Source: Marsupella aquatica (lineage: Eukaryota > Plantae > Marchantiophyta). From it: a stretch of DNA of 64,000 nt. The position numbers and the translations under genes are program-made. Below the pieces are notes generated by a model, which searched no databases, had not been told where the DNA came from, and saw only the letters and a program-made list of their open reading frames with translations. Where the stretch lies: NCBI GenBank assembly GCA_973895155.1, contig OZ316899.1:8926287-8990286 (forward strand). The letters run 5' to 3'. This document shows positions 13,701-62,759 of this stretch, piece after piece (position 1 is the first letter of the stretch; each line of letters starts with the position of its first letter).

Positions 13701-13939
13701 GAGTAGTTCCGGATGCGCTCTGCTAGTGTTACAGATTATCCATTGGTGAGCTTGCGGCCTACTGAGACAATAATGGCCATAGTTAGGGGCACGCAGACAA
13801 TCCATGGACCTATGGCATGATTGACCAAGGCTGGACAGATTGTTGAGCAGGAAGGGACTGCCCAAAGTATTGCTAAATAGCGATCATTGGCTATCTCTTC
13901 TACCCTACAAAAAGATATTAGGGATTTGGTGGAGAGTTG

Positions 13940-31215: not shown

Positions 31216-32227
31216 GGCAAAGGAGAAGACAATTGTGATGCCTCCTGAATCCGAGATGGCCAGTAATCGAGAGAATTACAAGAAGGTGGGCATTGATTCA
31301 TTAGCCGACTTTCCTAGGGTGATCAACAATGTCAAGATGGTAGACGAAATACACATGCAGAATAAACGTGGGAAGAACGTGATTGCCCGATCGGATTGCA
31401 CAACAATTTCTGAGGAGATGATGGCAATTGTTATGGTGTTTCTTTGGTAGGCCTGATTGCAGAAGATTTCACCTCCTCCAGATTGTTCCATGACATTTGC
31501 GCCAGGCATTTGCGAGGACCATTTTTGTGTTGAGTTTGCGAAGGAAGGCTATACACCAAACTCAACAAAGGATCCAGCACTTTGAGCAATCCTCCGTTTC
31601 ATTGTACCAATTTTGACACCGATAAGCCCAAACAAATTGCAAGCAAGTTGGCCGCATGATTGTCACCGCCTATGACAAAGGTAAACCAATCAATTGGGCT
31701 AGTGTGCTTTTAGATTCTTTTCAGCTGAGATGCAAGAAGGTGAAGGATGGTATCAATTTGTTTGTTGCACCCATGTTGTTCCACTTGTACAAGCTCGACA
31801 AGAAGCTTTTGACGGCAGACTTACAGTTCTATGAAGAAGAAGAGGCAAACAAAGCCCTCATTGAAGACCCATCCTCCAAAGATGAAGACAGTGAGACAGA
31901 GGATGAGGATGCTATAGAGATTCCTGTCAAAACCGAGTTTCAGGCAGCCCCTGTGCGAGTGTTGGGGGTCAACCACGAGGTTCAACATCAATCAAGAAAC
32001 CTCAAGAAATCTCTGTTATTCAGGTGGATTTGGATGACTCGTTGTGTCCATTGGAAAGGCGACTATGCAGCACGGTGGATGATTTTTGCAGAGCTAATTC
32101 CATCAATGCTTGTTTGATTAATCAGTTACAAACTAGATTTTCTTGTTCAGGAGATACTTTACTCGCTAAGATCAAAGACCTATACTCATCTTCTACGCAA
32201 ATTGATCAAGAAAGGAAATAGTGGAGG
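31216..32227 (+). pseudogene. Gypsy accessory ORF family B, 5' part (split by the CACTA insertion)
   Basis: Homology to 14909-15796; TATA-like CCTTATATAAGG near 30805; frame continues after 48287. Confidence 0.7.
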
Positions 32228-33170
32228 CACTAGAAGGAAATGATGTTTTTATTACTGAAAAAATGACTAGCTTATGAGTGGTTTGGGACAATTTACAACT
32301 CATTCATTTGAGTTCACAAAGGCAAGTCGCTTTGGTATAGTAGTCCTTTTGGACATAGTGTTTTTTTATCAACAACTGCAAATTGCAGGTTGTTTATGAC
32401 ACCGTCCATTGGGAGACTGACGGTCTTAAATAACTCAAAATCTTAGTTGAATTGTGTTTCATTAAAAAGAACTGATGGTCTTAATAACTCAAAATCGAAG
32501 TTGAATTGTGTTATGACTCATCAAATAAGGAAATGACATGTGTCTAAAGGCATCAAATAGCATTTAGACACGTGGAAGGTCTGAGCCACACAAACCAAAT
32601 TACAAGTGGACACGTGTCTCCTTTATATCATCCCAGCAGCCAACAGGTGACACTTTGATAGCTTAATTCCCAGTAGGGTACACGTGGAGATAATTGTAGT
32701 TGTTTAGGACGTTTATAATGACTACTATTGGAGTGATTTTGTTGATGTCTTATATTACCAATATTTGAGTCTTTTCCGCTCAGTCATTTATGACTTCATG
32801 GAAGTTATTTAGTCAGTCCTTTGTGTCATTTCATAATTGGACCAATTCTCCCAATTGGTCCTATTTCCAATCATCCTGACAATTTGCCTAGCTAGAAAGA
32901 CATGTCTTAGAAATCAACTGCAAGAGGATATATACATTGCAAATATACACAAAAAGCCATTGAATGAATATAAAATTCTGCATAGAGACTGCAGACTTCA
33001 TTTCACCCCCAATGTACAGGTGATCGACTGTTCAGAATCACAGTAAAGTATTTCCTGGATGAACTAATCACAAAACAAGTCTATTGGCCAACTCAGCTTG
33101 TGCATCAAAACTACTCGAGCTTGAACCAAAGAGCTCAAGTCACTACATTCTATCAAAAAACAACTCCTTG

Positions 33171-36100
33171 CTACTTCCTCATCAACTTCTGGTACCACAA
33201 GAAATGTCTGTCGCCCACATCCTTCAGAAATTTGACTTGAGAGTTTGGATGCTTTTTCTCAAGTAGAGGTGCATCCTGTTCAAACACCTCATTTGCAATC
33301 ACGATCAAATGTCCTGGTGGAATTTCATTGCCATTGTAAAAATCTTGCCCCCAGACTCCCTGCACTGTTGCAAGAGCAACAACCCGAGAGTCCACTGGGG
33401 ACTTCAATTTCACCACGTCCCCAATCTTGAACTGCCAGCAATAAATCAATATATTACGGCTAATTTAATTAGAGACCATATTTTCAATCTGCGGTGCCAA
33501 TGAACCCTTGGCTTGCAACAATACTGATGCGCGCCATTTCAAGGGATGTAATCACTGCTAAGTGAATCATGCATAATGCAGGATAGTGAACAGATGCAAA
33601 ATGATAGTAATTAATTTAGAAAAGGAGAACTCTATGAAGATTGTCACCTTCAACACAGTTGGTGAAGACGCTGACTTCAGAACATCCGTAGTTAGAGGTC
33701 TTGAAGGGGTTGGGTGTTCTGAGATTGTTTCATTGCCCTCTTCAAGAGCCTGCATGATTCCCACCTTTGGCATCTGATCAAAGGAAAAATTAGACAAACT
33801 TAGACCAAGAGCATAGAATCAGGTTTGCATATATATTGGACTGAAAAAAATTCTACATACTGTGCATATTCCACTCAAACATCCACCATCCGTGACATAC
33901 AAGACATAGAGCTAATTTGTAAGAACACGGGCCTAAGAACACTTTGAATGTACACAATTCCTGAGCCCCTGCGCTAAGCACCTTGTCACAAAGTTTGCAT
34001 CTATACTATGAGATAGTTGAGTGCAGCACAAAAACCTTACCTTTCCTTTAGGTTTTCGGCCCTTGCCTGTCTTAGGAGTTAGTTGAGGTGAACTGGAGAT
34101 ATTAAGGACCTTTGTGGGATCATCTAAGACCTCTTGCTTTACAGTCACAGAGTGACTATACTCCGCATCGTCCATCAGGTCTTTTTGCTCCGCACTTTCC
34201 TCACCGACATGGACATATATTATTCAATTTTGCAGATGATCGAAATGTTTTACAAATCATTTGCATTACAATGATTTTACAAAATTAAGCTCTTAATTTT
34301 TTATCACCCAGAGCAAATGGTCATGACCTAGCTTAGAGTACAAATTAGACAGACATACCCTCTTTGGACAGATCCGCAAAATTCAACTTCATTGCATAAC
34401 TCTTTGGTGCTGAAGTGCCCGATGCAGCCTTAATTGTGGAAGTGGGTAGGCTTGGCGTACCAAGTTCCTCCCTAGCTGGTGAGCAGGTGTACCAAGGATG
34501 GACTTAGTACTTGCCAAGGATGGGCTTACATCTGACCTCCAACCCAAAACATTTGCTTTGTCATCAAAAGGATTAGGTCAAAGGTCTGATAGACCTGGAC
34601 TATGACCTCTCTGCCTCTTCTGAAAAAGGCAGGAACAACTATCAGCACAATAATGCAATCAAACATTTATCAGCACACTCAGAGAATGTATGGCACAAAC
34701 TGAAAGATGATCATGTCATAAGGGTTAGCACACTCACATAATTTGCCTCCCTCCCACGATAGCCACCTCGTCCAACTTTAGATGGATTCTTCACTTCTGC
34801 TCTCGCTCTAGTCATTTTCTGAATGCTGGTTAGTCCTTCTGGGGACAACCACCACTCACAAAGTGTTTTCCATTGCTCAGGCTTGACATTTTCAGGAGGC
34901 TTCTTGTCCAAGCGCTTCCCAATCGCTTGAAAATGCTTGTGAAGTTTTGCACGTTGAGCCTTCATTATTTTTGACAAGTGGGACCTGAACTTCTTCTCAG
35001 AAAAAGTCCCCCCTACATACTGCCAATTAGTAGCCATCACATCATACAAATGGATAATAATGTCCTTGTCTTGCTTAGCAATGTTACACACGGAAGGGTC
35101 GAGTCTGCCAACACAAGCTGCACGAAGGTCGTCTGCCCAACGTCCCCGGAATTGGTCACTTGCATCAATATCGTCATTCCAAATCTGCACACGAGACATC
35201 ATTGTCGATTGTGATTGATTCAAACTAACCGATGCTGTCAGTAGGATACAGGTCGGGGCTGTTTCCAACTTCTATTTAAAAATTGGCAAGCATCCTATTT
35301 TGATCCTATGTTGATCTGCTAGAAGAGTTTGAATTAAAGTTGGCATGATACCTGAATACTTGCTTTCTTCATGCCCATTTTACTTTGCTCAGTTGTGTGA
35401 TCCACCCAATGTTTCTTTGCAGCTCGAGACATCTGCCGCATAATTGACTGTTGGGACGGTCCACTTGCACTGGCCATCATAGCACAATTTCCCTGAGGGA
35501 TAGGGGTCACTACAATATCAAAGATTTACATCTTAGTTCAGACTTAGAATTTGCCACCAATATACTTGAACCCTGACTTGAACTTGGCATTAAGCCTTGC
35601 AACGTACATTGACAAGTAATTAACAGCCATGGTCATCCCATCATATTTTACATTCAATCACAATCATAGCTAGGCTGTGTCATATTCAAATTCATACATA
35701 GCTAATGTAAAGAAGCTAGTACAGGTGGAAACTTACGCAAGCTGACAACTCCCGTGATGGGATCTTTATAATACTTAGCAGAGGTGTGTGAGACAGCCTA
35801 AAACAATATACAGTCAACAATCAGTACATTTACTAAATGTCTTCAATATTCTTATAAGTTGCGGACATATTTCATATATTAGTAAGATATAGCACCATAA
35901 TTGGTGTCCTTCACAGCACAGCAAAAAAATGAAAAATTAATTAGACACGTACCCCTGCGCGTTGTTTGTCCCCAATGGTTATCTTGTCGTCACAATTCCC
36001 CCAGTCGGCGCCTCCCTCATTCCCAGAGTCACTGTAAGGTGTACCTTCTGACCGCTCATTGCCCTCAATATCTGAGCCGTTGTCTGCCATAGTTGGTATG

Positions 36101-36589
36101 TTCATCGCTTGCTGCCTTGCACTCTTCCTTGTTGGTAGAGAAGGTACCTGCAATTGCGCTGGTTTCTTTCTATAAACACGTTTCGTTTTGCTTCTTCCCA
36201 CACCTTCTGAACTGCCTTTCATCAACCCAAACTAATGTTAATTAATGTCATTCATGCAAATTTTCAAAGGCCACATTATTTAACAATGCCAATAGCAATT
36301 CCCAGGCCACTGGACGCATTCAAATTCTACTCTAATGTTAATCATATAAAGATTGACTTAAGGTGGACTACCAAAGTTGGGAGGGACTATATATTCAAGA
36401 CCTGTTCAAATCTGCTGCAGATTTTCCAATAACAACTGCAATGAAGGCGTTGTTTGCTTTTATGTTCCTCAATCTCTCCAACTCATAGGCCGTGAGTTCA
36501 GCATTTGACTCTTCTGGGGACTCATCAGCCGAATCCAAGACCGAATCACTTGAGTTCTGCATCCACACACTACCAACACAGCTCCACAC
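33171..36589 (-). pseudogene. TnpA-like multi-exon gene
   Basis: AYELERLRNIKANN; PPENVKPEQWKTLCEWW..MTRARAEVKNPSKVGRGGY; C-terminal VALATV..NEIPPGHLIV..FLWYQK. Confidence 0.82.
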
Positions 36590-36633
36590 AGTTACTCTTC
36601 CTCAGAATCTTCCTCATCTTCCCAAACATCATC

Positions 36634-39600
36634 CTATATTATCTCTTCAACTGATTCATCTGTCACCCTTGCAACTGTTTGCTGAGCGACTAAGCTCTCT
36701 CCTTCCTCCAATGGCACAGCTCGGTTAGCAGCTGCAACAAGCTCCGCTTCAACTACCTCGTGATGGTCTACAAGATCATTGTATTCAACATCATAGATAC
36801 CCTCAACAACTCTACGAGACCTTCCCTCCTTATGAAGGACATGCCTCCATGAGGTTCTAGCCTCGTTAGGATAGAAGAAAACTTGCTCAACTTGACCAGG
36901 CAAGACATAGTCTAACTTCTTGGCTGCAGGATAAGGCATGTTAAAGTTGGCCAGCCAGAGACCAGTTTCATCATGTTTCATAGATGGACCAGTATTGTCT
37001 GGTCCCCACTTTGACCGGACCCATTTTGCCTTGAGGATAATGGCTGGTTCTAAACGCAATAGTGGTCCATAGTCAAGTTTAAGAATCTGGGTGAGAACCC
37101 CAACGTAGGTTTGCTTAGCCAAAGCAACTCCTGACTGATCCCTTCTCTGCTCGTGGAAAGTGGTGGCCAGCCCACTGTCAAATGTAGCGTACCCTTGACA
37201 ATCTGTGTCCCTGAGATGGGAGAGCTCACGCCAACTACCATCCCTTCCTTTACAGCGCATTACCCTGTAATGATTTCCATAAGCCTTCATTGAAGTATAC
37301 GTCAGACCATGCTGGCTTGGGGGAAAGGAAATAGCCGTCAACAACAACTTGTTTTCATCATCATCAAGGTTAGCTTCGGAAATTCATTCCTAAACCAAAC
37401 CCCAAAGGGAATTCCCTCCAATTCTTGAGGATAAGTTGCTGCTATACGACTGCATGGAGGCCGTGTCTGGTTATTTTGTTGGACAAAAGCTTCCCTCTGT
37501 CTTCTTCTCTCTTCCTCTGCATTCTCATAGAGCCTGCAAACCAATCCAAAAACGTACAATATCAACCACTAATTACAATATCTGAATAATTATCAGCAAG
37601 TTACAAAGTGTGTCATAAATAATAGTTGCGCAAGTAACAATTTACCTCAATCATGGTGTTACCAACAAATTATTCTGTAGGTAGTATGTATGAGCAACAT
37701 CTCGATCTACCACAGTTAGAGTGACTTTGCATGAGGCCCCTTCCAACACCACCCCTTTAACTCCTTCCTCCTCTTCAGCATCCCAAACACGCCTCCTTGT
37801 AGATTGGCAGTCTACCATATACTCTGTCACAAATCCTAAAGCCTCTTTGAGAATGTATCCTTCTGCCATTGATGCCTCTGGTCGTGCCTTGTTCCGTACA
37901 AAACCCTTCAGATTCTTGAGGTATCGCTCAATTGGATACATCCATCTTTGTGATACAGGCCCACAAATGTCCAACTCTTCCACTATATGCACCATGATAT
38001 GAGTCATAACATCAAAAAAGGACGAAGGGAAATGCATTTCCAAAGCACAGAGTGTTTGTGCTACATCTTTCATCAACGCATCCTTTGTTGTAGGGTCCCA
38101 AACTTTACAGCAAATCTTACGCCAAACTCTGCACACACTCACAATGGCCAATCGGGGTCCCTTGTCCATCAAATTCCTCAATGCCAATGGAAGGATCTGC
38201 TGCATTAGGCAATGATAATCGTGAGATTTCATACCTGCCAGCTTATTGCTAGGCCGCACACACTTAGCTAATGAGCTGCCAAAGTCTGTGGGAACTTTCA
38301 GACACTTCAAGGTTCCCAGAAATTGTGCTAGCTCTGATTTGCTCATGACATATGGTGCCTTGGGTTTCACAAAGTGATCTTTTTTCTGGTTTGGATGAGG
38401 CTTCATCCACAATTGCTCATGAACACCTTCAGCTTGCATATCATTCCGAACAGCAGCAGTGTCCTTCTTCCCAGAAGTTGTGTGGATAAGATTATGCTCA
38501 ATGTTTTTCTCCGTGTGCATTGGATCAAGGACATGATTGATCAGAAGTTTATGCGCGCCAGATATAATAGAACATGAGTAACAAGTTATAAACATGAGAG
38601 CAAAGTCTTGACCAGTCATTTCTTGTGGCCAATTAGATTCATCTACCTTCGAAATGCATAGGCGACAGATACAAAGAAAAATAAACTGACTCTGGCCACT
38701 GTGGCTCCCCTGCCATAATAAAAAACAACGATTGGTAGTGGGCTCTTTCTGAAATTTTCCCATCCCAATTGAAGTGGCCAGAGTCGACTAATTTAGAATA
38801 CAATTTAGAATACTAATGAAGAAACAGTTCTGTTAGTAACGAAATTGTAGGGTTTTGAGCAAACTCTATGGGTTTTTTAAGTTATCTTAGTCTTTCCAAG
38901 GAAGTGAAGTGGACAGGTAGCGATAGCAGATTGAGGCAACATGACCCGTAAGATAAGCGACTCTATATCGTGGTTCCTGGCCTTGGACGGCACCACAAGA
39001 AATAGAAAGGGCACTATGATGACCAGGAAAGGAGGAATCATACGACAGGCCCTTATTGCTTATCAGAATGAATTAGATTTTAATTTAGATTCTAAAGTTT
39101 TGCAGGCAGCCCTTCAAACGGTTGTAGGTAGCATCAAGAACTACTACAAAGCATTATTAATCATATCTCGCTAGTTCAAACATTAATTTACGCATACTAC
39201 AATCTTAAAACAAAACAATATATTCTAATCGTTTGATTCATTCATTTGCACAGGCCTACACAAAAACAAATACTAAAAACCCAAAAAGTACCAGGTCATC
39301 AAAGCAGGGGTAAGAGACCCTTGGAGAACTAACTGAAGAGCCGACTAGGCAAAGACCCAATTCTACAGATGCCCGTCCTCGCAGTCCCCACAATCAATCC
39401 AAGAGCCAGACTGCCTGCCAGCTAAGAGATCGCCAAACATCTATGCGACTTAGCACATTACACACTGTAATTAAACACTGTGGGCCTGTTCCCTCACAAA
39501 GACCAAGAATGTGCTCGAGCAAAACTGATGAATAGCTGTTCAATTCAAACTTCCACACGAAAGAGTCTTGTAGATAACTAGTTTAAATAAGAGAGATAAG

Positions 39601-41426
39601 AAAAGGTAAAGTGATAACTCACAGTCCAATATGGCAGCACGGCAAGACCCTGTTTCCTCTTGACTCCATGGAGCTTTGATGGGCAGTGCTTGCTTCCTTG
39701 CTTGGCCCCTTCGTTTTTCAGAAACTCTTCAACTTCAGCAGCATAAGCCAGCTTTAGCTCACATGTCATCCTGGGGGAGGGCCTCGTGACTCTATCTTTC
39801 CATCAAACTTTGCAGCATAGTCCGGAGTACAATACTTGTGATTGGCCTCCAGCCATCTACGGCTTCCAGGGAACACATTTTTTGATAGAGACTGGGACCT
39901 TCTACAAGTGACATTGGGTCCACACACTACACAACCATGGTATCCTTTGGTCACTTGACTAGAAATGAGGCCCAAAGCTGGATAGTCATTCACTATCCAT
40001 AATAGAATGGCCCTCAGTGTAAACCACTTTTGTTTACCCGGCCTATCTAGTGCATCAAAGCACTTGACTCCTTTCCAGAGCTCTGAAAGCTCTTCTATCA
40101 GTGGGGCCATGTAGATATCTATGTTACAATCAGTTACAGATTCAGGTCCAGGAATCAGTAAAGACAGCATAATAAAAAACTTCTTAGTAGACAACCAGGG
40201 AGGTAAATTGTAATTTAATAACATTACGGGCCATGTGGAATGCTTTAGATTGTTCTCACCAAACGGGTTTACACCATCCAAGGCTAATCCAAGATGAACA
40301 TTCCGTGGCTCACTCTCAAAAGTATCATCTATACTAGCTTCAATTTCTGCCCAAGCCCTTGAATCTGCTACGTGACGGACCTTTCCATCCTTGCTCTTAT
40401 TGTCTGCATGCCAGGTCATAAGCTCCGAAATGGCTTTACATCTATACATGCGTCTCAGTCTTGGTATGAGGGGAAAGTGACGGAGAACTTTGACTGCTTG
40501 CTTTGACTGCCCAACCTGCTTGTACCTAGGTTTTTTGCAGGTTGGACAGTGATCGCACTCTGATAAATCCTTTCTGAACAAAACACACCCATCCTCACAA
40601 GCATGGATTTTGACATAATCTAATCCAAGATGACCAATGAGCTTCTTACATGCATACAGATTCTTAGGAAGCAAATGCTTTGATGGCATAGTGTGTTTTG
40701 CCATCAAGGAAAGAAGCTCATCAACACCTGAGTTAGTAAACCCATTGTTATGGCAGGTGTTCAGAAAGGTCAATACAAAGGACAGCTGGGAAGTATTGCA
40801 CCCCTCATATAGAGGCGCACATGCCTCTGTAAAGGCATTCATCATTCTTTCTTCTGACTCTTGATCCCAACACTCCTCTCGACCAGTCTGCTCCTGAGCT
40901 GTGGAAGTTGTGGACTCCAAGAGCTCATCATATTAAACATCTCTTCCCCACTTCTCTCTGGATTTTCCCTCGAAGGACTTTCATCTACAGGATCACTTGG
41001 ATGGTTTTCCATTGGCAACGTCAAATCCTCCAACAACCGGGGAATTTCCATATCACAGGTTACATCAATGACAGACCCTCCTATAGCTCCAGTATCTATA
41101 TTGCTACCCTCTGATGGAGGATTGACCTCACATAAGTGTTCATTCCACTCCTCATCTGATGTGTCACATTCATCCCCCCACCAATGTCGTTGAGATGGAT
41201 GTTGGGAGTACAGTAACAGGTGCTTCTTGACTATGTGAACACTCACACGGTTACCCCTACAGTTGCAAATGGTGCAAGGGCACTTTATCTTCCCTATACT
41301 TGCAGACCTACAAGCAGCCAGCTGTCGACGCCATAATTTGTCATCCCTAATATGCAACTGAAGATCACTCCTTCGGAAGTCTCTGAATAGCCGAGACTAT
41401 CCAAAGCCTACACGATTGGCACTCAT
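36634..41426 (-). pseudogene. TnpD-like CACTA transposase (Transposase_21, DUF4218 and DUF4216 type domains)
   Basis: KCPCTIC; IHACEDGC; HFPLIPRL; LALDGVNPF; NDYPAL; DPMHTEKN; MKSHDYH; RWMYPIERY; RPEASMAEGY; LPGQVEQVFF; frameshifts near 40900 and 39766; introns near 39622-38560 and 37645-37535. Confidence 0.95.
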
Positions 41427-43224
41427 CTTTGCCAATAAACTTAAAAGACTCTCACCTTACCGGACCACGATGACATGCAGTACAGCACACCTCAAAGTTG
41501 AATCAGCGCAACGAAGCTACTGAATTTTTGCTTCAATTTGATCACGTAAGTGGGACTGCACATTGCCAAGTTCAAATTTGAACATAAGTTCTTCTAATCT
41601 ATACGTCCAACATGAGCACTCAATAATGTGAACTCCACATAGTGTTTCATTCCCTCTCATCATTTTTGCTGTATATGGAGAGTAGCATGTACTCACGATT
41701 ATATTCATTGTCACATTCTCACTTCATGCTAACCTTCTCATGTAACTGGCAGTGATTGAACCACTTCTAGGAGATGATACAGAATTTAAATCCATGGCAT
41801 CACATGCAATAAAAAGAAACCAAAGGCGTTGATACCTGCTGAGTCGAGGAGAATCTTGAAGTCTTCAAACCAAGGAGCTTGCACCGTAAACCCCTCACAC
41901 CTTCAAGGTCACGGACAGACAGCATGAAATGACATCCATCAGCCATGGTCCGAAGTAGTACTACTCCATCTAAGTCTGCTTTGAGTCCAGGATGACAGAC
42001 TTACACGCAAATAGACCACAACAAGAAGTTAAAGAAACTTGACACGCATTGACCAGGCGCGACAACAGAAGTTAACAGGGTTGCGACTGCGAGGGCGGTG
42101 AAGTTAACAGGGTTGTGACTAAAAACCTGAGCAATGAATAAGTTGTTGCTCCTGCAGTCTTGCTGCAAGTCACTGATTTGTCTGCTGACTCTACTTCAGC
42201 ACCACAACAATTCAAATAGATGGCAACCTCGATTTCCTTTCTTGCTGAGGTCCTGGAAATCACCGAGTTTACGACTTCCAAAGCGGGCGGTATGATCACC
42301 TTGTCTGTCCCACTCCAAACTTTGATTCTATCATGCAAATCCGTCCAACATTTGAAGAATGAGTTCACCAACGATTAAGCCAAGACGCGAGGCGGTTCAG
42401 GGTGAGACTTGCGACGGGCACTGCAGATCAAACTAAGAATGCGAGAATGAGCCTAAGGCAAAGAGTCGAGAAACCAAAACCAAAATGATGCGAACAAATG
42501 TAAAGACTCTGTGCCACGCGGAGCCGGGCGGGAGTAGGGATCTTACTGCAGAGTGAAACCCGCCCTCCCAATAAATGAACTTCTCATTTAATTACCATTG
42601 ACATTACCCTAAGACAACAATATTAGTGGAGGTCCTTCACTCTTACCTCAAATTCATAATAAATTCCCTCCATATCCTAAGATATTTATTCACTAGAAAG
42701 TGAACCCCTACTCCTTAAGTAGTCCCCTACAAAGTCTACCACTAAACTCCACTATCAAAATTAACCCTTTGAGTGTTTTACATAACTCATTTCCAAAGCT
42801 TCTTCCAAAGTCAAAAGGGCCATCTATCATGTAATAATTTGATGTCAATTAACCATACCCATACCCATACCCATTTTGGCCAAACTACTGGCAACATCTT
42901 AGCTAGGAAAGTGTGACAAAGCTAACAGTCTTTTGTTGGATATTATAGCCAGATTCAAAAATGGAAAGTATAGGGTGAAGATATATGGTACAATATTAAA
43001 TGCACTACCTTTCTGGTCAGACAATAGTCCAAATTGACCTGTGGATCAAGTATGTTAGAACGCAAGCTACCTCTCTTTTTGTCCACCCCTTTTTGTAAAG
43101 TGCCCCGGTCTTAAGAAAGGGTCAGATAGATTAAAATAATTAGTATTGACTAGGTACTGAATTTTAGCCTGGCCTGGGGATTCTGAAATTTACGGTCAAA
43201 CACCATTCAGCACCCACCAGTCTC

Positions 43225-44308
43225 AAACCACTCGGGTGATTCAGTGATTTTATAAAACATGGCTCGCACCACTGCAATGAGAGTGGTATAAGCAGTGCTT
43301 TAATTCTTGTCATCTCAAAGCACCTGATTATGAGTGGATTCTGAGTGGGTTCTTCAAGTTGCAAAGACCCAGGCTAAGAGGGCTGGCACATTGTATTTAT
43401 AATTTTAGAACATGGGGTGCCAATGGTAGGCTCGTGGTTTTTGGTTGTAGCCTTCCTCATTCCTCCAACTTAGCTCCATCACATTGCTCCTGAAGGACAG
43501 CTCTAACACAATGGCCTCCCAGTTTGAGCAAAACCACCCACCCCATCACACAAGAAATCAAAAGGTGCTAAGTTTTGGGGCACATAGAAGTTGAGCAACT
43601 CCTTCCACCACCTTTAGCAACATCACTCCAAGAGTTTGTGGAATTGGAGAAATAGAGTTAGTGGGTGACCCTACCATGTACCACTGGTGAAACCACTCAG
43701 ACCTCTTAGTGGTTTTATAAAACATGGCTCGCACCACTGCAATGAGAGTGTATAAGCAGTGCTTTAATTCTTGTCATCTCAAAGCACCTGATTATGAGTG
43801 GATTCTGAGTGGGTTCTTCAAGTTGCAAAGACCCAGGCTAAGAGGGCTGGCACATTGTATTTATAATTTTAGAACATGGGGTGCCAATGGTAGGCTCGTG
43901 GTTTTTGGTTGTAGCCTTCCTCATTCCTCCAACTTAGCTCCATCACATTGCTCCTGAAGGACAGCTCTAACACAATGGCCTCCCAGTTTGAGCAAAACCA
44001 CCCACCCCATCACACAAGAAATCAAAAGGTGCTAAGTTTTGGGGCACATAGAAGTTGAGCAACTCCTTCCACCACCTTTAGCAACATCACTCCAAGAGTT
44101 TGTGGAATTGGAGAAATAGAGTTAGTGGGTGACCCTACCATGTACCACTGGTGAAACCACTCAGACCTCTTAGTGGTTTTATAAAACATGGCTCGCACCA
44201 CTGCAATGAGAGTGGTATAAGTAGTGCTTTAATTCTTGTCATCTCAAAGCACCTGATTATGAGTGGATTCTGAGTGGGCTCTTCGAGTTGCAAAGACCCA
44301 AGCTAAGA
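43225..44308. repeat. Tandem repeat, about 465-bp unit x2.3
   Basis: AAACCACTC anchors at 43225, 43690 and 44154; near-identical units. Confidence 0.95.
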
Positions 44309-46683
44309 CGGGTGACATATTATTTTGACAATCTAATTTGAGTAGATGAGATGCAAATAGTGTATGTGTGCAAGTTTTTTTGTTATAACTAACAGCTGCA
44401 TGCTTCTTCACTCCTCCACGTCAGCCCCTTAGTGATATTAAATTTATTCATTTTAAGCAAGAACTAAAGATTGTCTTGCGCAAGACTAAGTGCCAAATTG
44501 ATAACATTTAAATTAATTAATTTGTGGTAGAGTTGGGAGGTAGCGATGTCCAACCACCGTATCAAACTACATTCTTTTTATTCAGATTTGTTCTGTAGAG
44601 ATTAGTTGAGAAATATTTACTTTGGGTGTATATGCTTCTATGTCCCTAGTCTAAGGTAAGAACCTTTGGATCAACGTAAGTTTGTGTGCTAGTTAAGTAG
44701 TTTAAACATACACTGTCTGCTTCTAGCATTGGTGTAGTCACTGGTGCTGCGCGTTAAGTTTAGTTCAAGAAGAGGAATTCTCGCTACGAGAAGACTTTGC
44801 CAGAATGCACTCCTTTGCCAGTTTTCCAGAATGCACTCCCCTTGCATTCCTTTTGAGTGAATCCTGAAACGCGAGCAGAGGGGACGACACACACCCGCAA
44901 GCTGTAAACCACAAGCGCAAGCTGCTGCCATAGGACTCTTGTTGAAATCGAGTACAATTTTGTAGCATAGCGGATTTCCTATAGCGGTTCATTGGCATCA
45001 GTGAGTGAGCACGCGAGAGGAAGGGAGGTGGAAGGGAAGCAAGGAAGGGAGGGGGAAAGAAAATCTGACTTCAAGAGTTCTGTCAAGGCGCAAGCGGCAG
45101 TTTTCTTTGGCACGGATCAATGCTTACTCGAAGCAATTCTTACTCAAAGCAATACGAAGGACGGATTGACGTCAAGCTTACTCAAAGCAATTCTTTCAAA
45201 TCTTAGTGATCACTCTGGCTCGGCACAAATGGAGGGCTCAGTTTCTTGATAGAAGGTCAATCACTCACCGCCCTCGCGAGCTGCGAGGCCGTCAACTTCC
45301 TAGTTTGCCACGCCCACAACCATCATCATCAGCTCTTCTCTTGAATGCTACCACTACATTTCTCATTTCAAGAAGGCGGGCAATCGCAATAGGAAGCCAT
45401 TGAGAAGTGATGACCTTCATTAGATGCGAATTGCACCTTAGCTAAGACAATTTAGGGTTTGCAGATGGAATAATTTCATGGCTGTATGGGATAGTTGCAA
45501 TTGGGAGGGACGGGTCACAGGGTCATTTCTCTCTTATATACAACGTGAGGCCAGGTCATAGGGTTGACAGTCTGGAAATTTGGAATATTTTTACAAGTGT
45601 TGTTTCTTACGAAGGAGGAATTTAATTTGGTCGCGCCCAGGTAGGCTACAGGTAGGCTACGTAAGGGGATGAGTGTGAGGTTAAGACGATTGTTGGGAAA
45701 CCTGGTGGAGGGCAGGCAGGAGGCCATTAGGATAACAGAGAGGAACAAAAAGTTTGATTCAAGCTGCTGGAATTGTTGAGGCCGACGTCCAACTTTTGTC
45801 CGCTTCCATGGAGAGGAAAGCCACAGGAAGACTTTGTATTCCCTATCTTTGTATCTGTCATCATCTACTAGCTCTTTGTGTTCCTGGTTAGACTAGCTTG
45901 GTGGTCTCTCATACATTGCACGGTTTTGGAAGAAAGTGTGGTGGCGAGTGGCTGGACTATCTACTTAATACTATCTCTCCGGTAAGTCTCATTATTTGTT
46001 CACCTATAATTAATTGGATCTATTGTCTGCTTACTCAGACAAGCGTTCAGTTTGTCAGTTTTGCCTTTCGTTCCTTGGCGACTCAGCCTAGCTACTTCAT
46101 ATGCATTGTAATATCTCGTAGCACCTGTGTCCGTTACTATCCAGAGTTTGCAATTGGGTTGGGGAGAACCCCATTGCACTGTCAACAAGAAGATTGCAGT
46201 GATTTGTCAAGGGCAATCAGCCATTAGACTCTACTTTTATTAATTAGTTGGTCACAAATGTTATTCTTCAATTGTTGTTTCAGCACGCCTGGCATGGTAG
46301 TATGTTGCTGATCAAAGCCCGATCGGACTGCATTGCAGAGTTTGCAGCTTCTCATTTGATTAAGAAAATAATGACCAATTGCAACAATTTAAGAAAAGCT
46401 GCTTTGAGCCGTTCATTGATGTACGTTGTTGATGTCTTCGCAACAAAGAAATCTGCAACAAGGTTTTGCCAAATTAAGATCATGCTTGTCGTTGAGGGGT
46501 CCACGTGCTTTCAGAGTCACTTTGTATTCTTCTATATCCCTTAGGGCTGATTGTTATACATTGAGTCAAAACTAATTCACAATATTTTTGTGGCTTTCTC
46601 AGGTAAGTTTCCTCGCTAGGGTACATCATCGATCCTTTGCAAGCAAACGGGAGACTAAGCTAGTAACTGAGTCCGCTTGCAGT

Positions 46684-47433
46684 ATGGCAATAGAGGCAAA
46701 GTTGGAGGATGCGTGGAGCACCTGTAGGCAAGCTTTTGGTGCAATTTTGTGGTCACCTGTGGCCTTAGTTTGTGACGGCCTGTTTTGGTCTTGCCTTGGA
46801 CTACTGAGCGAGTTTTTCCGCTTTTTGCATGAGCTGCTTGAGCGTCTCATTGCTGTTGCTCGTCCTCAACCAGAAGTTCCTGATTTCAGCCCTTAGTCTG
46901 CTGGTAATCTCACTGTTGTTGCTCGTCCTCAACCAGAAGGTCCTGATTTCAGCCCCCAGCCTGTTGAGAATCTCACTACTGTTGCTCGTCCTCAATCAGA
47001 AGGACATAGTTCCAGCCCTCATCCTGCTAAGAATCCAAAAGATGAGCATGGAGAGCAGCAATGGATGCATCCTGTATATGAGCACCATAGCCAGCCAGCT
47101 CAAATTCCAGCTCAGCAACCGATAGTGAGAGAGCGACATCTACTGTATGAGCATGGGCAGGCAGCTCAAGTTTCAGGGCATGGCCAGCATCAGATTGATC
47201 CAAGCTTTGATGTATTATATTTTAGATGCAATCATCCCTCCTTGCATAGTAGGAAACGGTGGTATGCAATGGGGAAAGGCCGGAATCCTGGTATCTATGA
47301 ATGTTGGGAAGAAGCAGAGCGCAAAGTCTCAGGTTTTAGTGGCAATAAACACAAGTCTTTTAGGCTTATAGAAGAAGCAGAGAACTGGTTATTGGGTCAT
47401 GTGCCGATAGAAGGTCTACATAGGAATTTATAA
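46684..47433 (+). pseudogene. CACTA cargo gene with C-terminal RNase H1 hybrid-binding / caulimovirus viroplasmin (Cauli_VI) domain; one premature stop
   Basis: WYAMGKGRNPGIYECWEEAERKVSGFSGNKHKSFRLIEEAENWL; ORFs 46588-46896 and 47065-47433 share a frame. Confidence 0.85.
46845..47020 (+). repeat. Coding minisatellite, about 60-63 bp x3 (VARPQPE.PDFSP)
   Basis: GTTGCTCGTCCTCAAnCAGAAG occurs three times. Confidence 0.9.
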
Positions 47434-47846
47434 GAACTTTTGCGGATCTAACTTGGCAGTGTTGTTGCACTGCACATTGTAATACATTTTGTAAAATTAA
47501 AACAATTTCAATGTTTATTTGTACTCACACGTTGTACAAGATGAAGTCTACTTATGGTTGAGTAACCAGCAAACTCTCTTGCGATCCTTTGCAAGATTGT
47601 ATTTCCACCAGAATATTTGTACTCCCACCCGCAGAGCTTGCGTTGTAGTAGTTCCGTGCTCATTACCAACTGGCCCATGCAAGTCCACATTTAACTGCGT
47701 AAAGAGCTTGCTACCCTGGTTGCTACTAAGAAATGATTTGTAGGCCAAATCAAACTACACATGGTCCAACATATATTTGTTCAGCAAATATATAGCAGCT
47801 GCTCAAGATAGAAGTGTACAACTATATGTTCCTGCCAAGTCTTTTA

Positions 47847-48029
47847 ATGGAAAACACTGATGTCTCAAGGTTTCTGTTGGGCCAGTCTTTTCTCACCGTT
47901 GTCCCATATAACTCTATGTGTCATAGTCATTAGCCACCATGGAAAACACCGATGTCTCAAGGTTTATGTTGGGCCAGTCCTTTCTCACCGTTGTCCCATA
48001 TAACTCTATGTGTCATAGTCATTAGCCAC
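47847..48029. repeat. 92-bp tandem duplication near the CACTA end
   Basis: ATGGAAAACAC...ATTAGCCAC twice. Confidence 0.92.
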
Positions 48030-48287
48030 AGTCACCCAAACAACTACAAAACTACCTTAAACAACTAGAATCCTCTTCATCTCTAATTAGAGTAGTTTTA
48101 AAAATTGTCCTTAGTCACTCAAATAAAACAAATGAGTTATTCTTTCTATTGCAGTGGTAAACTTAGTTGCTTTTACAAGCCAGATACCACTCTTCAAAAA
48201 CGCAGTTGTTGGGATTGCTTAAGAGTTGTTTCCGACCAGGAGTAAAAAAGGACATAGTTGTAAAAACCCAATTTCCTTCTAGTGAGG

Positions 48288-50552: not shown

Positions 50553-53500
50553 TTACCACACTTGCCCCTTCAAGCTGTCAATCTGAGCTCGAAGCCGTGA
50601 GATTTTGGCATCCTTTCCAACTCTGGCTTGAACGGCCAAGGCTAACTTGGCTTTAGCGTCACTGACCTGGGTCAGGGCGGTCGCAAGTTGAAGTCGGAGA
50701 AGTTGCAACTCGGTATCTTGGCTTGAGGCTTCATCCAAGAGCTTGGCTGCCTCAACACAATACTGCTCAATCTTGGTTGTGGCTTCAGCGTGAGCTCGCC
50801 CCGCTTTTACTGCCGCCACCAGCTCTTGGCTGAAGAAGTAAGCCACCTTGCGGGCCATGAACTCCCCCATGTCCCAACCAACTTGTTAGGAGAAGTCGCC
50901 CAACAACCCATTCAAATACATGCCCGGTGCAAAGAGTTCCGGGTTCACCAGGCTGTGCCCAGTCGGGTTTGAGTAGGGACAAACCTTGACTCGGGCAGAG
51001 GCCAAAGATGTTACATCTAGCCCTGGGGTGGTAAGAGTAGAGGGGGAGGGGTTCCCAGAAGGGAAAAGGGGACCCACTTGTACAGTTGCAAAGGGTACCA
51101 AGATTTCCTCCGGGATCACGGCCTCTGGTTCGGGGCCAGCTTCAACCCGCTCGGCTGTGATTGCAAGGGCCTGGTTTTGGGCATCTAGGGTTGCAATAAC
51201 CGCCAAGTCTGGCATAGAAGAAGGTGCCTCAACTGTTGTTGGTGGGGTCAAGGTGGACACCACAGGCGCTGGACTCTGGCTCTCGGGTTGTGGCCGCCTC
51301 TCTTGAGCAGGGAAGACTCACCTGGCTGGGGTGAGTTTGGGCTCGTTGCACCTCGAAAGGGTAACTTGACAATCAAAGTGGGTGTACCACTCGATAATGA
51401 TCTCGATGTGGCTTGCGAGGTACGCCTTTCCCCCAAGGTACAAGGTTTTCCTTCGTCGCTCCATCTCTTTGTGGAACTTCTTGACAATGAAAGAAGCCCA
51501 CTTCCTAGGCCAGTAGTTTTTGACCTGGATCACCTGGGCAACGGATATCTTGCCCCGCAGCTCCATCATGTGGAGAGGATACCTCTGAAACTCCAGCCAT
51601 TCTGCAATCTCCAAGATGAGGCATGTCCTCATCAGGAAACCATTGTCCACCACACCCTCAACCGGGAAGCTTGAAGATTGGTGTGCGCCCCCTTAAAGGT
51701 GTCACATAGGGGCGTTAGTTAATTTTTGAGCTTATTAAGACTTATAGTTACCTCTTTGTGTGTAATTTCAGTGTAGTTGAAGGCTTTAGGCCTTGGTAAA
51801 CTTTGAACCTAGAAGATTGAGTGAGAAGTTAATAGTGAAGTCAATTCAATCTTCTAGGTTTAATAGTTAATCTTTGTAATATTTTAATCAAATCTTTGTA
51901 GGTCATGAAAAACTCTGAATTTTTCATGATTAGATAGATTTTAGATAGAGAAATCTACCCAAAAAAATGTCAGGCGAAATGGACATGTCATTAGTAAGTT
52001 AGTCATTTTTGTTTCGCATATTAACACTTAATTTGGTTCTTTGACACTTAGAATAGTTTTTTGTTTTTGCAACTTTATACTAAATTGGTATCTTTAAGTA
52101 TTTTATTGGTAAACTTAGATTAGTCCAAAAAGTCTGAAAATTTGCCATAGTGGAGACTATACGTAGTAGAAGGAGCTGAAAAACTTTTGGTACTTTTGAA
52201 GATCAGGTTAAGGAGTAAACAATAGTTGTGGGAGATACTTTGAAGGTTTTGATGACTTGGATGTCCCGGTCGGACGATGTCCAGGATGTCAAGGACATCA
52301 ACTCCCGACTTTAGACGGCCAAGACTACTTTCCAACATTTTTCACCAAAAAACTCAAAGCTTTAGGCCCTAGTCGGTGATCAGCCTGATTGAGGCATGAG
52401 ATTAGGTAGGAGTGAAGACTCCATGAACAATCAATTGATGAGATATGGTGGATTAGGTAGTCATCAGTTGCAGACAACAAAGTGAAGCAGTTGTGGCCTG
52501 GAAGGACAAGTCGAATTGGAGAAATAATGTCAAATTACAAGTAGCCGAAGTTGAAATTTGCAAAAAACAAATGGTAGGAAAGCTCAGCGACACCAAATAT
52601 TTTATGGAGCCACATTTGCTTAACCGAATTGGTTAAAATTTGGTGTGAAGGTAGAAGGAAAGTAGAAGCACCTTCTAGAAAAATATGAGCACCAACCAAG
52701 CTGTGGTTGGTGAGAGAAAAATCAGATGCCAGAGGGGGGTCTGCAACTTTCTAGCTTTTGTTGCAAATCTGATTTCACACCTTCAAGCAAACGAATGTTG
52801 TTGTAATCAATGATTGGTGGGAAGATGGTGATGGTGATTAGTTGTGATTGTGAAGCACATGAGATAGAAAGTAGTAAGCTGGAAGGGAAGGTCGAAATGG
52901 AGTTAGGAGTTCCAATCGCAAGTCGCCAAAGTTGAAATTCATGCAAAACGAATGACAGAGAAAATCAGCAATGGTAAATATTTTCTAGAGCAACATTTGC
53001 TTGACCAAATTGGCTCAAATTTGGTGTGGAGGTAGAAGGGAAGTAGGCGCACTTTCTGGCAAAGTATGAACACCAAAAAAAGTCTGGTTGATGAGAGAAA
53101 AATCAGATACCAGAGGGGGGTCTGTAACTTCCAATTTTTCTATGCGAAATTCGATTCTATGATTTGAATCAGTGGACCAGAGTTTGAATGGAGGTTAGAA
53201 GCTTGATTAGGAGCTAGTAAGAGAGGGAAGCACTCAACCCATGGTGAGGTTTGGATTGGAGTGGATTGGAGTGGCTGAAGAGTATTTAAGGATTGTAGTT
53301 CTTGTGTTGAGGGACAGATGCCTTGTTGCTCAAGTGGAAACTTTACCCACATGGAGTGGAAACTAAGATCAACAAGCATATGATCCCAGAGTGGATAGTT
53401 GTAGAGAAATGAGGAGAAGGACCCTGGATAGAGGTTTCATTTGTACCAGGAAAATTTATGATATTACATAAAGTCTCTTTTTCTTGCATTCCTTCTTTGC

Positions 53501-61200: not shown

Positions 61201-62759
61201 TATCGCTCCATAGGGTACATCCATCTGGTACTAACTGGCCCATACTGCCCTAGCTCTTCTACCACATGGATTAGGAGATGAGTTATAACATCAAAGAAAG
61301 CAGGGGGAAGTATATCTCCAAGTCACAGAGGACATAAGCAACATCTTGCTTCAACTGCTCCAATCCTTGGGGATCCCACACTTTCACCTATATACGGCGG
61401 AATACATTGCACAGTTGAAGAATGACATTACGGACCTCTGAGGCATAGGGGCAAAATGTGTTGCATCAGCACATGTAGTCATGTGTTTTCATACTGTCAA
61501 GTTTATTCTTTGTAATATGCTTCTTGAAGGCACCAGCATAGCGAGAGGGCACTTTCAAACAGCTCAATCTATACAAGAATGTCTTCCATTGTTCCTGTGT
61601 GCACACATAGGGAGCTTGGAACTTGAGAAGTACATTGGGATTGCTTGCATGGGGCTTCAACCAGAGGTGAGGGCGCACCCCCTTCTATTGCATATCAGCT
61701 CAAACTGCTCCTGTATCTTTCTCAATGTGCATGATGTCCACATTGTGTTTGCTGGGCTCAAATTCCTACACTCCACAAAGCAAAGAATTCAACAATAGAA
61801 ACATTAATTAACCAAATAGGATGTTTGTAACCAACATCTATCCACCGTTGCTCCAATCTAAAATTGCAATCATGCAGGGGCTGGAGGTTAAGTACATTAC
61901 CCTCCAGTGTTCCAACTCCAAGTTTATCAAGGTCTGTCTTTTCACATCATGTTTCACCAATGGATCCTCAAGCTCTTCTACAGTGGCAACTCTTTTATCC
62001 CAATCAGCCTTCTTGGCTGCCCACCTCAGGACTTGTTTTCTGGTGACCCTCTGTGGTGGGCCACAAAGCTCTGTTTTGATGTTGAAGTGTGCAATTTGAG
62101 ACCGTCTATGTCTGTGAGGATGATCAACAAGCAGATACCTTCTATGCCCCTGAAATTTCATATTGTGCAGGGCATGCGACCACTCACTTGTCACATTTTT
62201 CCCACATGGTGTGCACCCCACGTAACCCTTTGTCACTCGTCTAGATATGATGCCATGGCCTGGGTAATCTGCTATATCCAACAAACAAATTGCATGCAAT
62301 TTAAAAGGGCTGGGTCAAAGGAGCCCCTTCAGAACATCATGGGTTAACACCCATTTTATCCACAAAGTCGTCCACTCTTCCATTGCTGGAGCCAGCATGA
62401 TATCTATGAATTGCTTGGTCACAGAAGCTGGTCCAAGGAATAGCAACACCATCATCACAAAAAACCTCTTTGTATTCATCCATGGGGGAAGGTTGTAATT
62501 TAGCAGCATAACTGGCCAACATGAATAACGGTTGTTTTAGTCTCCAAATGGGTTTACTCCATCCAGTGTTAGACCAAATCAAAAGTTCCGCTTCTCTACA
62601 GAAAACTGTGGCCACCTCTCATCAACAAATTCCAATGGGTTGGAATCTCCAATGTGACGTTGGAGGCCATCACTACTCTTGTTATCAGGTGTCCATGTCA
62701 TCAGCTTGGAAATGGTAGGGCATCTAAATAGACGTTGTAGTCTAGGAATGAGAGGAAAA
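58250..62759 (-). pseudogene. Second degenerate TnpD-like CACTA transposase
   Basis: FPLIPRL, LLNYNLPPW, ADYPGHG, MKTHDY, RWMYPMERY, RPKASMA (after LTR removal), FPSQVEQAFF. Confidence 0.92.
59439..61149 (+). repeat. Solo LTR (1711 bp) with 5-bp TSD
   Basis: Starts TGTGGAAG; GAAGC on both sides (59434-59438, 61150-61154); removal restores the RPKASMA motif. Confidence 0.92.

What the first reader, a model, noticed from the sequence alone, without database searches (positions are those of the whole stretch)
46684..47433. CACTA transposon carries an RNA:DNA-hybrid/dsRNA-binding cargo gene
Seen: inside the TIR/TSD-bounded element and divergent from TnpD, a 249-codon frame with a hydrophobic N-terminus, three roughly 20-aa repeats, an H/Q-rich linker and a C-terminal RNase H1 hybrid-binding/Cauli_VI domain, with no RNase H catalytic domain. 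The only stop (TAG) aligns with CAG in the next repeat, consistent with a single C>T. Known: this domain binds hybrids and dsRNA and occurs in caulimovirus P6, a silencing suppressor; some DNA transposons encode anti-silencing proteins. Inference: a candidate transposon-encoded anti-silencing or R-loop factor.
Basis: partly seen in the sequence, partly recalled or inferred. Interest (0 to 1): 0.8.

Follow-up and report, generated by a model that had tools for sequence, protein, structure and literature searches.

The report
Transposon-borne nuclease-free hybrid-binding gene, broken copy
A 16-kb cut-and-paste (CACTA) transposon carries a broken copy of a small, undescribed gene with an RNase H1-type grip for RNA:DNA hybrids and no cutting domain; intact relatives are under selection and also ride in Copia retrotransposons, so it is probably a transposon helper gene of untested function.

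Summary
Window 46684-47433 (+) is a 249-codon frame with one in-frame TAG. It has a hydrophobic N-terminus, three 63-bp repeats, an H/Q-rich linker and a C-terminal RNase H1 hybrid-binding domain (HBD; Pfam PF01693, E 3e-14; the model superposes on human HBD 3bsu). No nuclease domain is present. The frame lies inside a CACTA element (32228-48284) with 14-bp perfect TIRs and an AGG/AGG duplication, and is divergent from the transposase.

It is not a stray RNase H1 fragment. It belongs to an unannotated protein family: conserved N-terminal helix, variable repeat-prone linker, HBD, and in some members a Cys/His tail. At least 14 diverged members were found. An intact 218-aa relative gives dN/dS 0.13 (N-terminus) and 0.38 (HBD). 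Only the coding sequence is conserved between loci.

Two diverged Copia elements carry a relative as an antisense ORF just past pol. Another assembly has a copy in a motif-studded transposon-like unit.

This copy is dead: one stop here and a frameshift in the transposase.

The anti-silencing or R-loop function is plausible but untested. The analogy with caulimovirus P6 is weak.

The scan's first stage noted the same kind of gene in another CACTA of this genome (s1-327522).

The parts
32228..48284 (-). CACTA (EnSpm-type) DNA transposon, 16,057 bp; transposase genes are on the minus strand
   Evidence: Inverted repeat I5, ends read, Transposase_21 and DUF4218 hits
32228..32241 (+). Left terminal inverted repeat, 14-bp perfect core CACTAGAAGGAAAT; similarity continues to 32256 (83% over 29 nt)
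48271..48284 (-). Right terminal inverted repeat, the same 14 bp in reverse complement
32225..32227 (.). Target-site duplication AGG, left copy
48285..48287 (.). Target-site duplication AGG, right copy
46684..47433 (+). Cargo gene (pseudogene): 249 codons, N-terminal helix, repeat linker, HBD; a single exon as far as can be seen
   Evidence: the intact relative P0001 aligns end to end
46684..46860 (+). Conserved N-terminal hydrophobic/amphipathic helix domain (aa 1-59); 53 of 57 residues identical to P0001
   Evidence: dN/dS 0.13; helix 2-59, pLDDT above 90 in P0001
46894..46896 (+). Premature stop TAG in repeat 1; aligns with CAG in repeat 2 and in relative L001
46845..47035 (+). Three 63-bp (21-aa) tandem repeats forming the first part of the linker; the relative has two
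47036..47259 (+). H/Q-rich low-complexity linker plus a short conserved Cys/His-containing extension before the HBD
   Evidence: disordered in the model
47260..47388 (+). RNase H1-type hybrid-binding domain (Cauli_VI, PF01693)
39766..41357 (-). Transposase (TnpD) 5' coding part with the Transposase_21 domain; frameshift relative to three relatives at about 39772-39781
37651..38763 (-). Transposase continuation with DUF4218
43225..44620 (.). About three copies of a 464-bp tandem repeat in the 5.2-kb spacer between the transposase and the cargo gene (end coordinate inferred from the repeat spacing)
   Evidence: families D1, D2
47847..48029 (.). 92-bp tandem duplication (97% identical) between the cargo gene and the right TIR
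   Evidence: family D4

Best explanation
Window 46684-47433 is a recently inactivated copy (one premature stop) of a gene from an undescribed, transposon-associated protein family. The protein has three parts. The first is a strongly conserved N-terminal helix of about 58 residues with a 25-30-residue almost uncharged hydrophobic core, most likely a membrane anchor or otherwise a self-association helix. The second is a fast-evolving, repeat-prone, disordered linker. The third is an RNase H1-type hybrid-binding domain with no nuclease.

The gene is a separate transcription unit inside a 16-kb CACTA element, pointing outward between the transposase promoter region and the right end. This element is itself dead, with a frameshift in the transposase.

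Inferred mechanism: the protein is a tethered, non-catalytic binder of A-form duplexes, meaning RNA:DNA hybrids and, more weakly, dsRNA. It would serve the transposon by occupying such duplexes. That could shield them from host RNase H1 or from the small-RNA silencing machinery, or protect reverse-transcription intermediates in the Copia-borne relatives.

Shown: the anatomy, the domain and its fold, family membership, purifying selection, and carriage by two transposon classes. Inferred: nucleic-acid binding, the nature of the anchor, and any benefit to the element.

My odds: transposon-lineage accessory gene under selection, about 0.6. Acts by binding hybrids or dsRNA, about 0.45. Specifically counteracts silencing, about 0.2.
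For: Anatomy is confirmed.

Family: an HMMER scan of 1.84 billion representatives gave the intact relatives P0001, P0005, P0007, P0010, P0078, P0052 and P0084 with the same helix-linker-HBD order at 27-56% identity. It also gave P0108 and P0121 (helix + HBD), and P0087 and P0126 (HBD + Cys/His tail).

Selection: against L001, dN/dS is 0.13 in the N-terminus (4 nonsynonymous vs 8 synonymous changes, Fisher p 0.0008), 0.38 in the HBD (p 0.04) and 0.77 in the linker. Between loci only the coding sequence aligns; the flanks do not.

Transposon linkage:
- This copy lies in a CACTA with intact TIRs and TSD.
- L018 and L020/L021 carry HBD ORFs antisense and tail-to-tail with the 3' end of Copia RVT_2 pol genes that are only 52% identical to each other.
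- L019, from another genome assembly, has a full-length copy with one stop inside a unit studded with an 11-bp motif in direct and inverted clusters.
- P0010 sits beside an N6_N4_Mtase-like ORF.
- Several diverged paralogues occur in one sequencing run, SRR18067351.
- First-stage notes report another CACTA copy and a Copia antisense HBD ORF in this genome (not checked by me).

Fold and residues: the window's HBD model matches 3bsu at rmsd 0.6 A. The equivalents of human Y29, W43 and K59 are kept. W43 is essential for hybrid binding in human HBD (PMC6846478).

Context for the proposed benefit: loss of RNase H1 in mouse oocytes leaves R-loops at transposons and impairs their silencing (PMC13392016). 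Transposon-encoded anti-silencing proteins exist, namely VANC (PMC5735166, PMC10398659).
Against: This copy is broken and so is its transposase, so nothing here is active.

Three CACTAs with about 55% transposase identity carry a SET gene and no HBD gene, so the gene is not a general CACTA feature. The only closer transposase relative (81%) is on a 1.6-kb contig without context.

Most family members sit on 1-3-kb contigs, so I cannot tell whether they lie in transposons.

Human F58 and K60 equivalents are His and Ser/Ala in the family. In human HBD, deleting F58-K60 abolishes binding and K59A/K60A lowers it about 10-fold, so binding strength or specificity may differ.

A membrane anchor would keep the protein away from chromatin R-loops. 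The Copia-borne members lack the hydrophobic core, so the anchor is not essential to the family.

There is no expression data and no functional data. The HBD tree has 48 columns and weak support.
Confidence: 0.55

Rival explanations
1. Captured host gene (Pack-CACTA style). The family is an ordinary, fast-evolving host gene family. This CACTA, and separately some Copia elements, picked up copies that do nothing for the element.
For: Gene capture by CACTA elements is common (established knowledge). The copy here is dead. Related CACTAs lack the gene. The genomic context of most relatives is unknown because the contigs are short.
Against: The cargo is a complete ORF with its own start and stop and no host-gene flank.

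No named or annotated protein with this architecture appears in 5.8 billion clustered proteins; the only named hits are bacterial RNase HI.

The antisense position just past pol is kept in two Copia lineages whose pol genes are only 52% identical. That is hard to get by independent random capture.

Three of the roughly ten loci examined are visibly broken (window, L005, L019), as expected for transposon-borne copies. dN/dS is below 1.
Confidence: 0.2
2. Host restriction factor. The family is a host gene that binds retrotransposon reverse-transcription intermediates or transposon dsRNA to restrain them, and it lies in transposon-rich DNA by accident or after capture.
For: An HBD would recognise RT intermediates. 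The fast-evolving linker and many paralogues resemble arms-race genes.
Against: The gene lies inside the TIR/TSD boundaries here. In the Copia elements it occupies a fixed internal position. A host defence gene would not be expected to be carried and kept there.
Confidence: 0.08
3. Neutrally decaying fragment of a host RNase H1 gene, or of an endogenous caulimovirid P6 gene, that happens to lie in the element.
For: The domain is the one found in RNase H1 and P6, and the frame has a stop.
Against: The N-terminal two thirds has no similarity to RNase H1 or any Pfam family, yet is the most conserved part across relatives.

There is no RNase H catalytic sequence in the element.

No Pfam hit reaching its gathering score (no RT, movement or coat protein) was found in the ORFs of 41.5-48.3 kb.

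Intact relatives end after the HBD.
Confidence: 0.03

Closest known systems
Hybrid-binding domain of eukaryotic RNase H1 (Pfam PF01693; structures 3bsu human, 1qhk yeast)
   Same: Clear sequence match (53 bits) and predicted fold (rmsd 0.6 A over 45 residues to 3bsu). The equivalents of Y29, W43 and K59 are kept.
   Different: No RNase H catalytic domain follows. F58 is His, K60 is Ser/Ala and T42 is Cys. A short conserved Cys/His-containing strand precedes the domain. The domain sits at the C-terminus behind a hydrophobic helix and a repeat linker.
Caulimovirus P6/TAV (the other carrier of the Cauli_VI domain)
   Same: A mobile or parasitic genetic element encodes a nuclease-free copy of the same small domain.
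   Different: No other P6 region is present. The protein is 218-250 aa against 520 aa for P6. In the paper I read, P6 silencing suppression is ascribed probably to its interaction with DRB4, not to this domain (PMC3836500). There is no evidence of common descent beyond the domain.
VANC anti-silencing proteins of VANDAL (Mutator-type) transposons in Arabidopsis
   Same: A DNA transposon carries an extra, non-transposase gene thought to help it against host silencing.
   Different: VANC binds specific DNA motifs in its own element's non-coding regions (PMC10398659). Here the domain is a structure-specific duplex binder, no target motifs were identified, and the function is untested.
Accessory or cargo genes of bryophyte-type CACTA elements (SET, PHD, BRCT and others) noted elsewhere in this scan
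   Same: Extra small genes sit between the element end and the transposase. I saw SET genes upstream of Transposase_21 in L012 and L014.
   Different: Those genes are co-oriented with the transposase and chromatin-related. This one is divergent, lies near the TIR and binds nucleic-acid duplexes. The SET-bearing relatives lack it.
Antisense ORFs of plant LTR retrotransposons
   Same: In L018 and L020 the HBD ORF lies antisense between pol and the 3' end of a Copia element.
   Different: To my knowledge, described antisense ORFs have no recognised HBD. Here the same protein family is shared with a DNA transposon.

Membership tests
RNase H1 hybrid-binding domain (PF01693 Cauli_VI) | Match to the Pfam model above its gathering score | tested here: met
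   53.4 bits against a cut-off of 21, E 3e-14, model positions 2-44 of 44
RNase H1 hybrid-binding domain (PF01693 Cauli_VI) | Three-stranded sheet packed against two helices, superposable on solved HBDs | tested here: met
   AF2 model of window 47164-47430 has a core pLDDT above 90. Foldseek top hits are 3bsu (TM 0.90-0.92 normalised to the target, rmsd 0.6-0.7 A) and 1qhk
RNase H1 hybrid-binding domain (PF01693 Cauli_VI) | Binding-surface residues of human HBD (W43, K59, K60; also F58 and Y29) | tested here: inconclusive
   In the profile alignment to 3bsu, Y29, W43 and K59 are kept, F58 is His and K60 is Ser/Ala. The roles of W43, K59, K60 and of the F58-K60 segment come from PMC6846478; the role of Y29 is from my own knowledge
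RNase H1 hybrid-binding domain (PF01693 Cauli_VI) | Preferential binding of RNA:DNA hybrids over dsRNA and dsDNA | not testable with these tools
   Needs EMSA or fluorescence anisotropy with purified protein
RNase H1 enzyme | C-terminal RNase H catalytic domain (PF00075) | tested here: not met
   Pfam finds only PF01693. tblastn with three HBD+RNase H proteins matches only the HBD. The relatives lack it too
CACTA / EnSpm DNA transposon | Terminal inverted repeats starting with CACTA | tested here: met
   14-bp perfect TIR, 83% over 29 nt
CACTA / EnSpm DNA transposon | 3-bp target-site duplication | tested here: met
   AGG on both sides
CACTA / EnSpm DNA transposon | Tnp2-type transposase (Transposase_21 with DUF4218) | tested here: met
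   E 4e-63 and 8e-34. The gene carries a frameshift near 39772-39781
Pack-CACTA captured host gene fragment | Cargo is a fragment of a host gene and evolves neutrally | tested here: not met
   The ORF is complete in relatives, dN/dS is 0.13-0.38 in the two domains, and no host parent was found. The absence of a parent rests on incomplete databases
Caulimovirus P6/TAV | P6 architecture beyond the Cauli_VI segment, and neighbouring caulimovirid genes | tested here: not met
   No other Pfam family in the protein and no Pfam hit reaching its gathering score in surrounding ORFs
Transposon-encoded anti-silencing factor (functional class, e.g. VANC) | Loss of silencing marks or small RNAs on cognate elements when expressed | not testable with these tools
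   Needs expression and methylome or small-RNA assays

The most novel reading that the evidence does not exclude
A single family of nuclease-free hybrid-binding proteins has been passed among, and kept by, both DNA transposons (CACTA) and LTR retrotransposons (Copia) of a bryophyte-type lineage. In this reading it is a general counter-defence factor. The tethered HBD would coat RNA:DNA hybrids or dsRNA made from the element and so block host RNase H1 or the small-RNA silencing pathway.
Probability: 0.18. Interest if true: 0.85.

Novelty: new variant of a known kind. Interest (0 to 1): 0.6.

Why it matters
Few transposon-encoded proteins are known that act on the host's control systems rather than on transposition itself; VANC is the main plant example. 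This is a candidate of a different type: a structure-specific duplex binder on a tether, kept under selection and shared by cut-and-paste and copy-and-paste elements. If it shields hybrids or dsRNA, it would tie R-loop and dsRNA biology directly to transposon counter-defence. It would also offer a natural nuclease-free HBD with altered contact residues for comparison with the engineered HBD probes used to map R-loops. If it proves to be only a captured host gene, it still defines an unannotated protein family.

Tried and rejected
- Whole-protein fold searches said nothing. Foldseek found no hit with E at or below 0.001, and VIA-align wide was filled by generic long helices matching residues 1-64. 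Only the HBD-alone model was useful.
- The word-index protein search with the window piece found one relative. The profile search added few more.
- The metagenome scan failed with a too-diverse alignment. A narrower alignment then gave one more member, L005, which is frameshifted, plus bacterial RNase H genes.
- I looked for the gene in related CACTAs (L012-L014). It is absent, and they carry SET instead.
- I tested whether the gene came in with a nested Copia. No pol remnant was found anywhere in the window.
- I tested for a caulimovirid remnant and found none.
- Flanking ORFs of the short contigs have no Pfam family.
- Zinc-site idea: C153, H159, C178 and H194 (P0001 numbering) are invariant in one subfamily, but two of them are not kept in the P0052/P0078/P0084 subfamily. 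No coordinates were available to check the geometry, so I dropped it as a claim.
- Origin of the HBD: the nearest non-family hits are multi-HBD proteins of oomycetes and fungi, which score high only because the domain is repeated. The 48-column tree is unresolved, so the donor remains unknown.
- Organism: cluster look-ups gave no names and the assembly accession appears in no paper. 'Bryophyte' rests on earlier scan notes only.
- Complex prediction (self-association of the N-terminal helix) was not available.
- The ESM Atlas was busy on three tries.
- Literature searches for an HBD or Cauli_VI gene in transposons found nothing.

Full report
**1. The observation**

Window 46684-47433 on the plus strand reads as 249 codons plus a terminal stop, with one internal stop, TAG at 46894-46896. 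Tandem Repeats Finder reports a 63-bp unit repeated 3.0 times at 46845-47035, with 83% matches and no indels. In repeat register, the TAG sits where repeat 2 has CAG and repeat 3 has CAT. The intact relative described below also has CAG there.

Pfam finds the RNase H1 N-terminal (Cauli_VI, PF01693) domain at nt 47260-47388, with 53.4 bits against a cut-off of 21 and E 3e-14. It finds nothing else in either piece of the frame. The domain matches the solved hybrid-binding domains (HBDs) of yeast (1qhk) and human (3bsu) RNase H1 by sequence.

An AlphaFold2 model of the window's own last 89 residues has a core pLDDT above 90. It superposes on 3bsu at 0.6 A over 45 residues, with TM 0.90 normalised to the target. 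There is no RNase H catalytic sequence in or near the frame.

**2. The carrier**

Inverted repeat I5 and direct reading of the ends define an element at 32228-48284. Its 14-bp termini are perfect (CACTAGAAGGAAAT) and it is flanked by AGG on both sides. On the minus strand lie a Tnp2-type transposase (Transposase_21, E 4e-63) and DUF4218.

The cargo gene is therefore divergent from the transposase. It lies about 5.2 kb from the transposase 5' end and 850 bp from the right end. The spacer between them holds about three copies of a 464-bp tandem repeat. No nested element is visible, and no Copia pol remnant was found anywhere in the window.

Three relatives of the transposase align across 39772-39781 only by changing frame. 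The transposase therefore carries a frameshift, and this copy of the element is dead.

**3. It is a member of a protein family, not a stray fragment**

The word-index search with the C-terminal piece found one close relative, P0001. It is 218 aa and intact, and comes from two Logan runs. Its first 57 residues match the window's at 53 positions, it has two linker repeats instead of three, and its HBD is conserved.

Nei-Gojobori counts against that locus (L001) are as follows:

| Region | dN/dS | Fisher p |
|---|---|---|
| N-terminus (4 nonsynonymous, 8 synonymous changes) | 0.13 | 0.0008 |
| HBD | 0.38 | 0.04 |
| Linker | 0.77 | not significant |

Nucleotide similarity starts about 10-40 bp before the ATG and stops about 90 bp after the stop codon.

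A full HMMER scan of 1.84 billion representatives with P0001 returned further proteins with the same order of parts at 27-56% identity:
- P0005, P0007, P0010, P0078, P0052 and P0084: the full helix-linker-HBD order.
- P0108 and P0121: helix plus HBD.
- P0087 and P0126: HBD plus a Cys/His-rich tail that P0078, P0052 and P0084 also have.

In a 48-column tree of 153 HBDs, the ten anchor-type members form one group (SH-aLRT 86). The others sit next to it. The tree is weak and says nothing about the donor of the domain. Among loci, only the coding sequence aligns. No member carries a name from any source.

**4. Shape of the protein**

The model of P0001 gives one helix over residues 2-59 at pLDDT above 90, a disordered stretch over 60-128, and then the HBD preceded by two short strands. 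The helix contains 25-30 nearly uncharged residues, with Kyte-Doolittle 19-residue maxima of 1.4-2.4 across members. A conserved amphipathic segment follows.

Against human HBD, the equivalents of Y29, W43 and K59 are kept, while F58 is His, K60 is Ser/Ala and T42 is Cys. In human HBD, W43A abolishes hybrid binding, deletion of F58-K60 abolishes it, and K59A/K60A lowers it about tenfold (PMC6846478). Binding is therefore plausible, but it may differ in strength or preference.

**5. Link to transposons beyond this window**

- L018 carries the P0087 ORF antisense to a Copia RVT_2 pol gene, overlapping its 3' end by 17 bp.
- L020 and L021 carry the P0109 ORF in the same tail-to-tail position, next to a Copia pol that is only 52% identical to the first.
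- L019, from NCBI assembly GCA_965154635.1, holds a full-length family gene at 9830-10546 with one stop in the N-terminal helix. Clusters of an 11-bp motif surround it. The same clusters sit between the ORFs of an adjacent SNF2 helicase gene. The motif also recurs, in inverted orientation, in a 136-bp satellite of 14 copies. This looks like a transposon with subterminal binding-site arrays, but I found no transposase within 10 kb.
- P0010 lies beside an N6_N4_Mtase-like ORF.
- One run, SRR18067351, holds three diverged paralogues.
- First-stage notes of this scan report a second CACTA-borne copy (s1-327522) and a Copia antisense HBD ORF (s1-759755) in this same genome. I could not read those places.

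Against a general link: three CACTAs with about 55% transposase identity carry a SET gene and no HBD gene. The one transposase relative at 81% identity is on a contig too short to show neighbours.

**6. Most likely mechanism**

The protein looks like a tether (helix), a flexible stalk (linker) and a non-catalytic duplex-binding head (HBD). Carriage by both a DNA transposon and retrotransposons points to a need common to both, which is more likely RNA-based host control than transposition chemistry.

The best-supported reading is a transposon accessory protein that occupies RNA:DNA hybrids or dsRNA. Shielding hybrids from RNase H1 could favour open chromatin: in mouse oocytes, loss of RNase H1 leaves R-loops at transposons and impairs their silencing (PMC13392016). 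Binding dsRNA could blunt small-RNA production. In Copia elements the protein could also protect reverse-transcription intermediates.

All of this is inference. A membrane anchor argues against action on chromatin, unless the protein acts at the nuclear envelope. The analogy with caulimovirus P6 adds little, because P6 suppression is ascribed probably to its interaction with DRB4 (PMC3836500).

**7. Comparison with what is known, and novelty**

The domain is a true HBD (membership rows met). The protein is not an RNase H1, because it has no catalytic domain, and it is not a P6. The carrier is a true CACTA. Full-text searches found no report of an HBD or Cauli_VI gene in a transposon.

I file it as a new variant of a known kind: a transposon accessory or cargo gene, with a new architecture and a domain not reported in that role. 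The copy in this window is a pseudogene in a dead element, so the interest lies in the family.

**8. Limits**

- I did not identify the organism. 'Bryophyte' comes from earlier scan notes only.
- There are no expression data.
- Selection was measured on one pair of sequences.
- Most contexts are short contigs.

Noticed in passing
window 39772-39781 (minus strand): The CACTA transposase changes reading frame here relative to three relatives (P0154, P0155, P0156). This is a frameshift, so the element is non-autonomous or dead.
   Followed up: partly
window 61871-62863 (minus strand): A second, different Tnp2-type transposase fragment (38-44% identity to the same relatives) lies near the window's end. 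It belongs to another CACTA element.
   Followed up: no
window 43225-44620: About three copies of a 464-bp tandem repeat (two of them 100% identical over 300 nt) lie inside the CACTA between the transposase and the cargo gene.
   Followed up: no
window 47847-48029: A 92-bp tandem duplication (97% identical) lies in the subterminal region next to the right TIR.
   Followed up: no
window 46600-46683: A consensus-like splice donor (CAG|GTAAGT at 46600-46608) and acceptor (TTGCAG at 46677-46682) lie just before the ATG, suggesting an 80-nt intron in the 5' UTR. It is not conserved in the relatives' loci.
   Followed up: partly
L018 332-877 with 861-2738; L020 253-630 with 687-2351: Two Copia elements whose pol genes are 52% identical each carry an HBD ORF antisense, tail-to-tail with the end of pol. 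This conserved arrangement deserves its own study.
   Followed up: partly
L019 8200-19100 (assembly GCA_965154635.1, contig CBCUJL010000020.1): Clusters of an 11-bp motif (GGTTTATGTGT) flank the HBD gene and lie between the ORFs of an adjacent SNF2 helicase gene (13352-16025). The motif also recurs, in inverted orientation, in a 136-bp x14 satellite (17018-19085). This looks like a large transposon with binding-site arrays and helicase cargo.
   Followed up: partly
L012 8893-9363 and L014 8820-9359: SET-domain ORFs lie directly upstream of Transposase_21 in two CACTAs from an ENA assembly. This matches earlier scan notes on SET-bearing CACTAs.
   Followed up: no
P0041 (184 aa; from the representatives search): This protein has two HBDs and a C-terminal hydrophobic tail-anchor-like segment. 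It is another case of an HBD joined to a probable membrane anchor. Its origin is unknown.
   Followed up: no
window 62896-63206: A 54-nt inverted repeat (93% complementary, 203 nt apart) lies next to a perfect 21-nt palindromic pair at 63001-63076. The structure is MITE-like or hairpin-like.
   Followed up: no
window 4104-4934 versus 51366-54845: Long inverted matches (317 nt at 77%, and 138 and 107 nt) link two distant G+C-rich stretches. They are probably two copies of one retroelement in opposite orientation.
   Followed up: no
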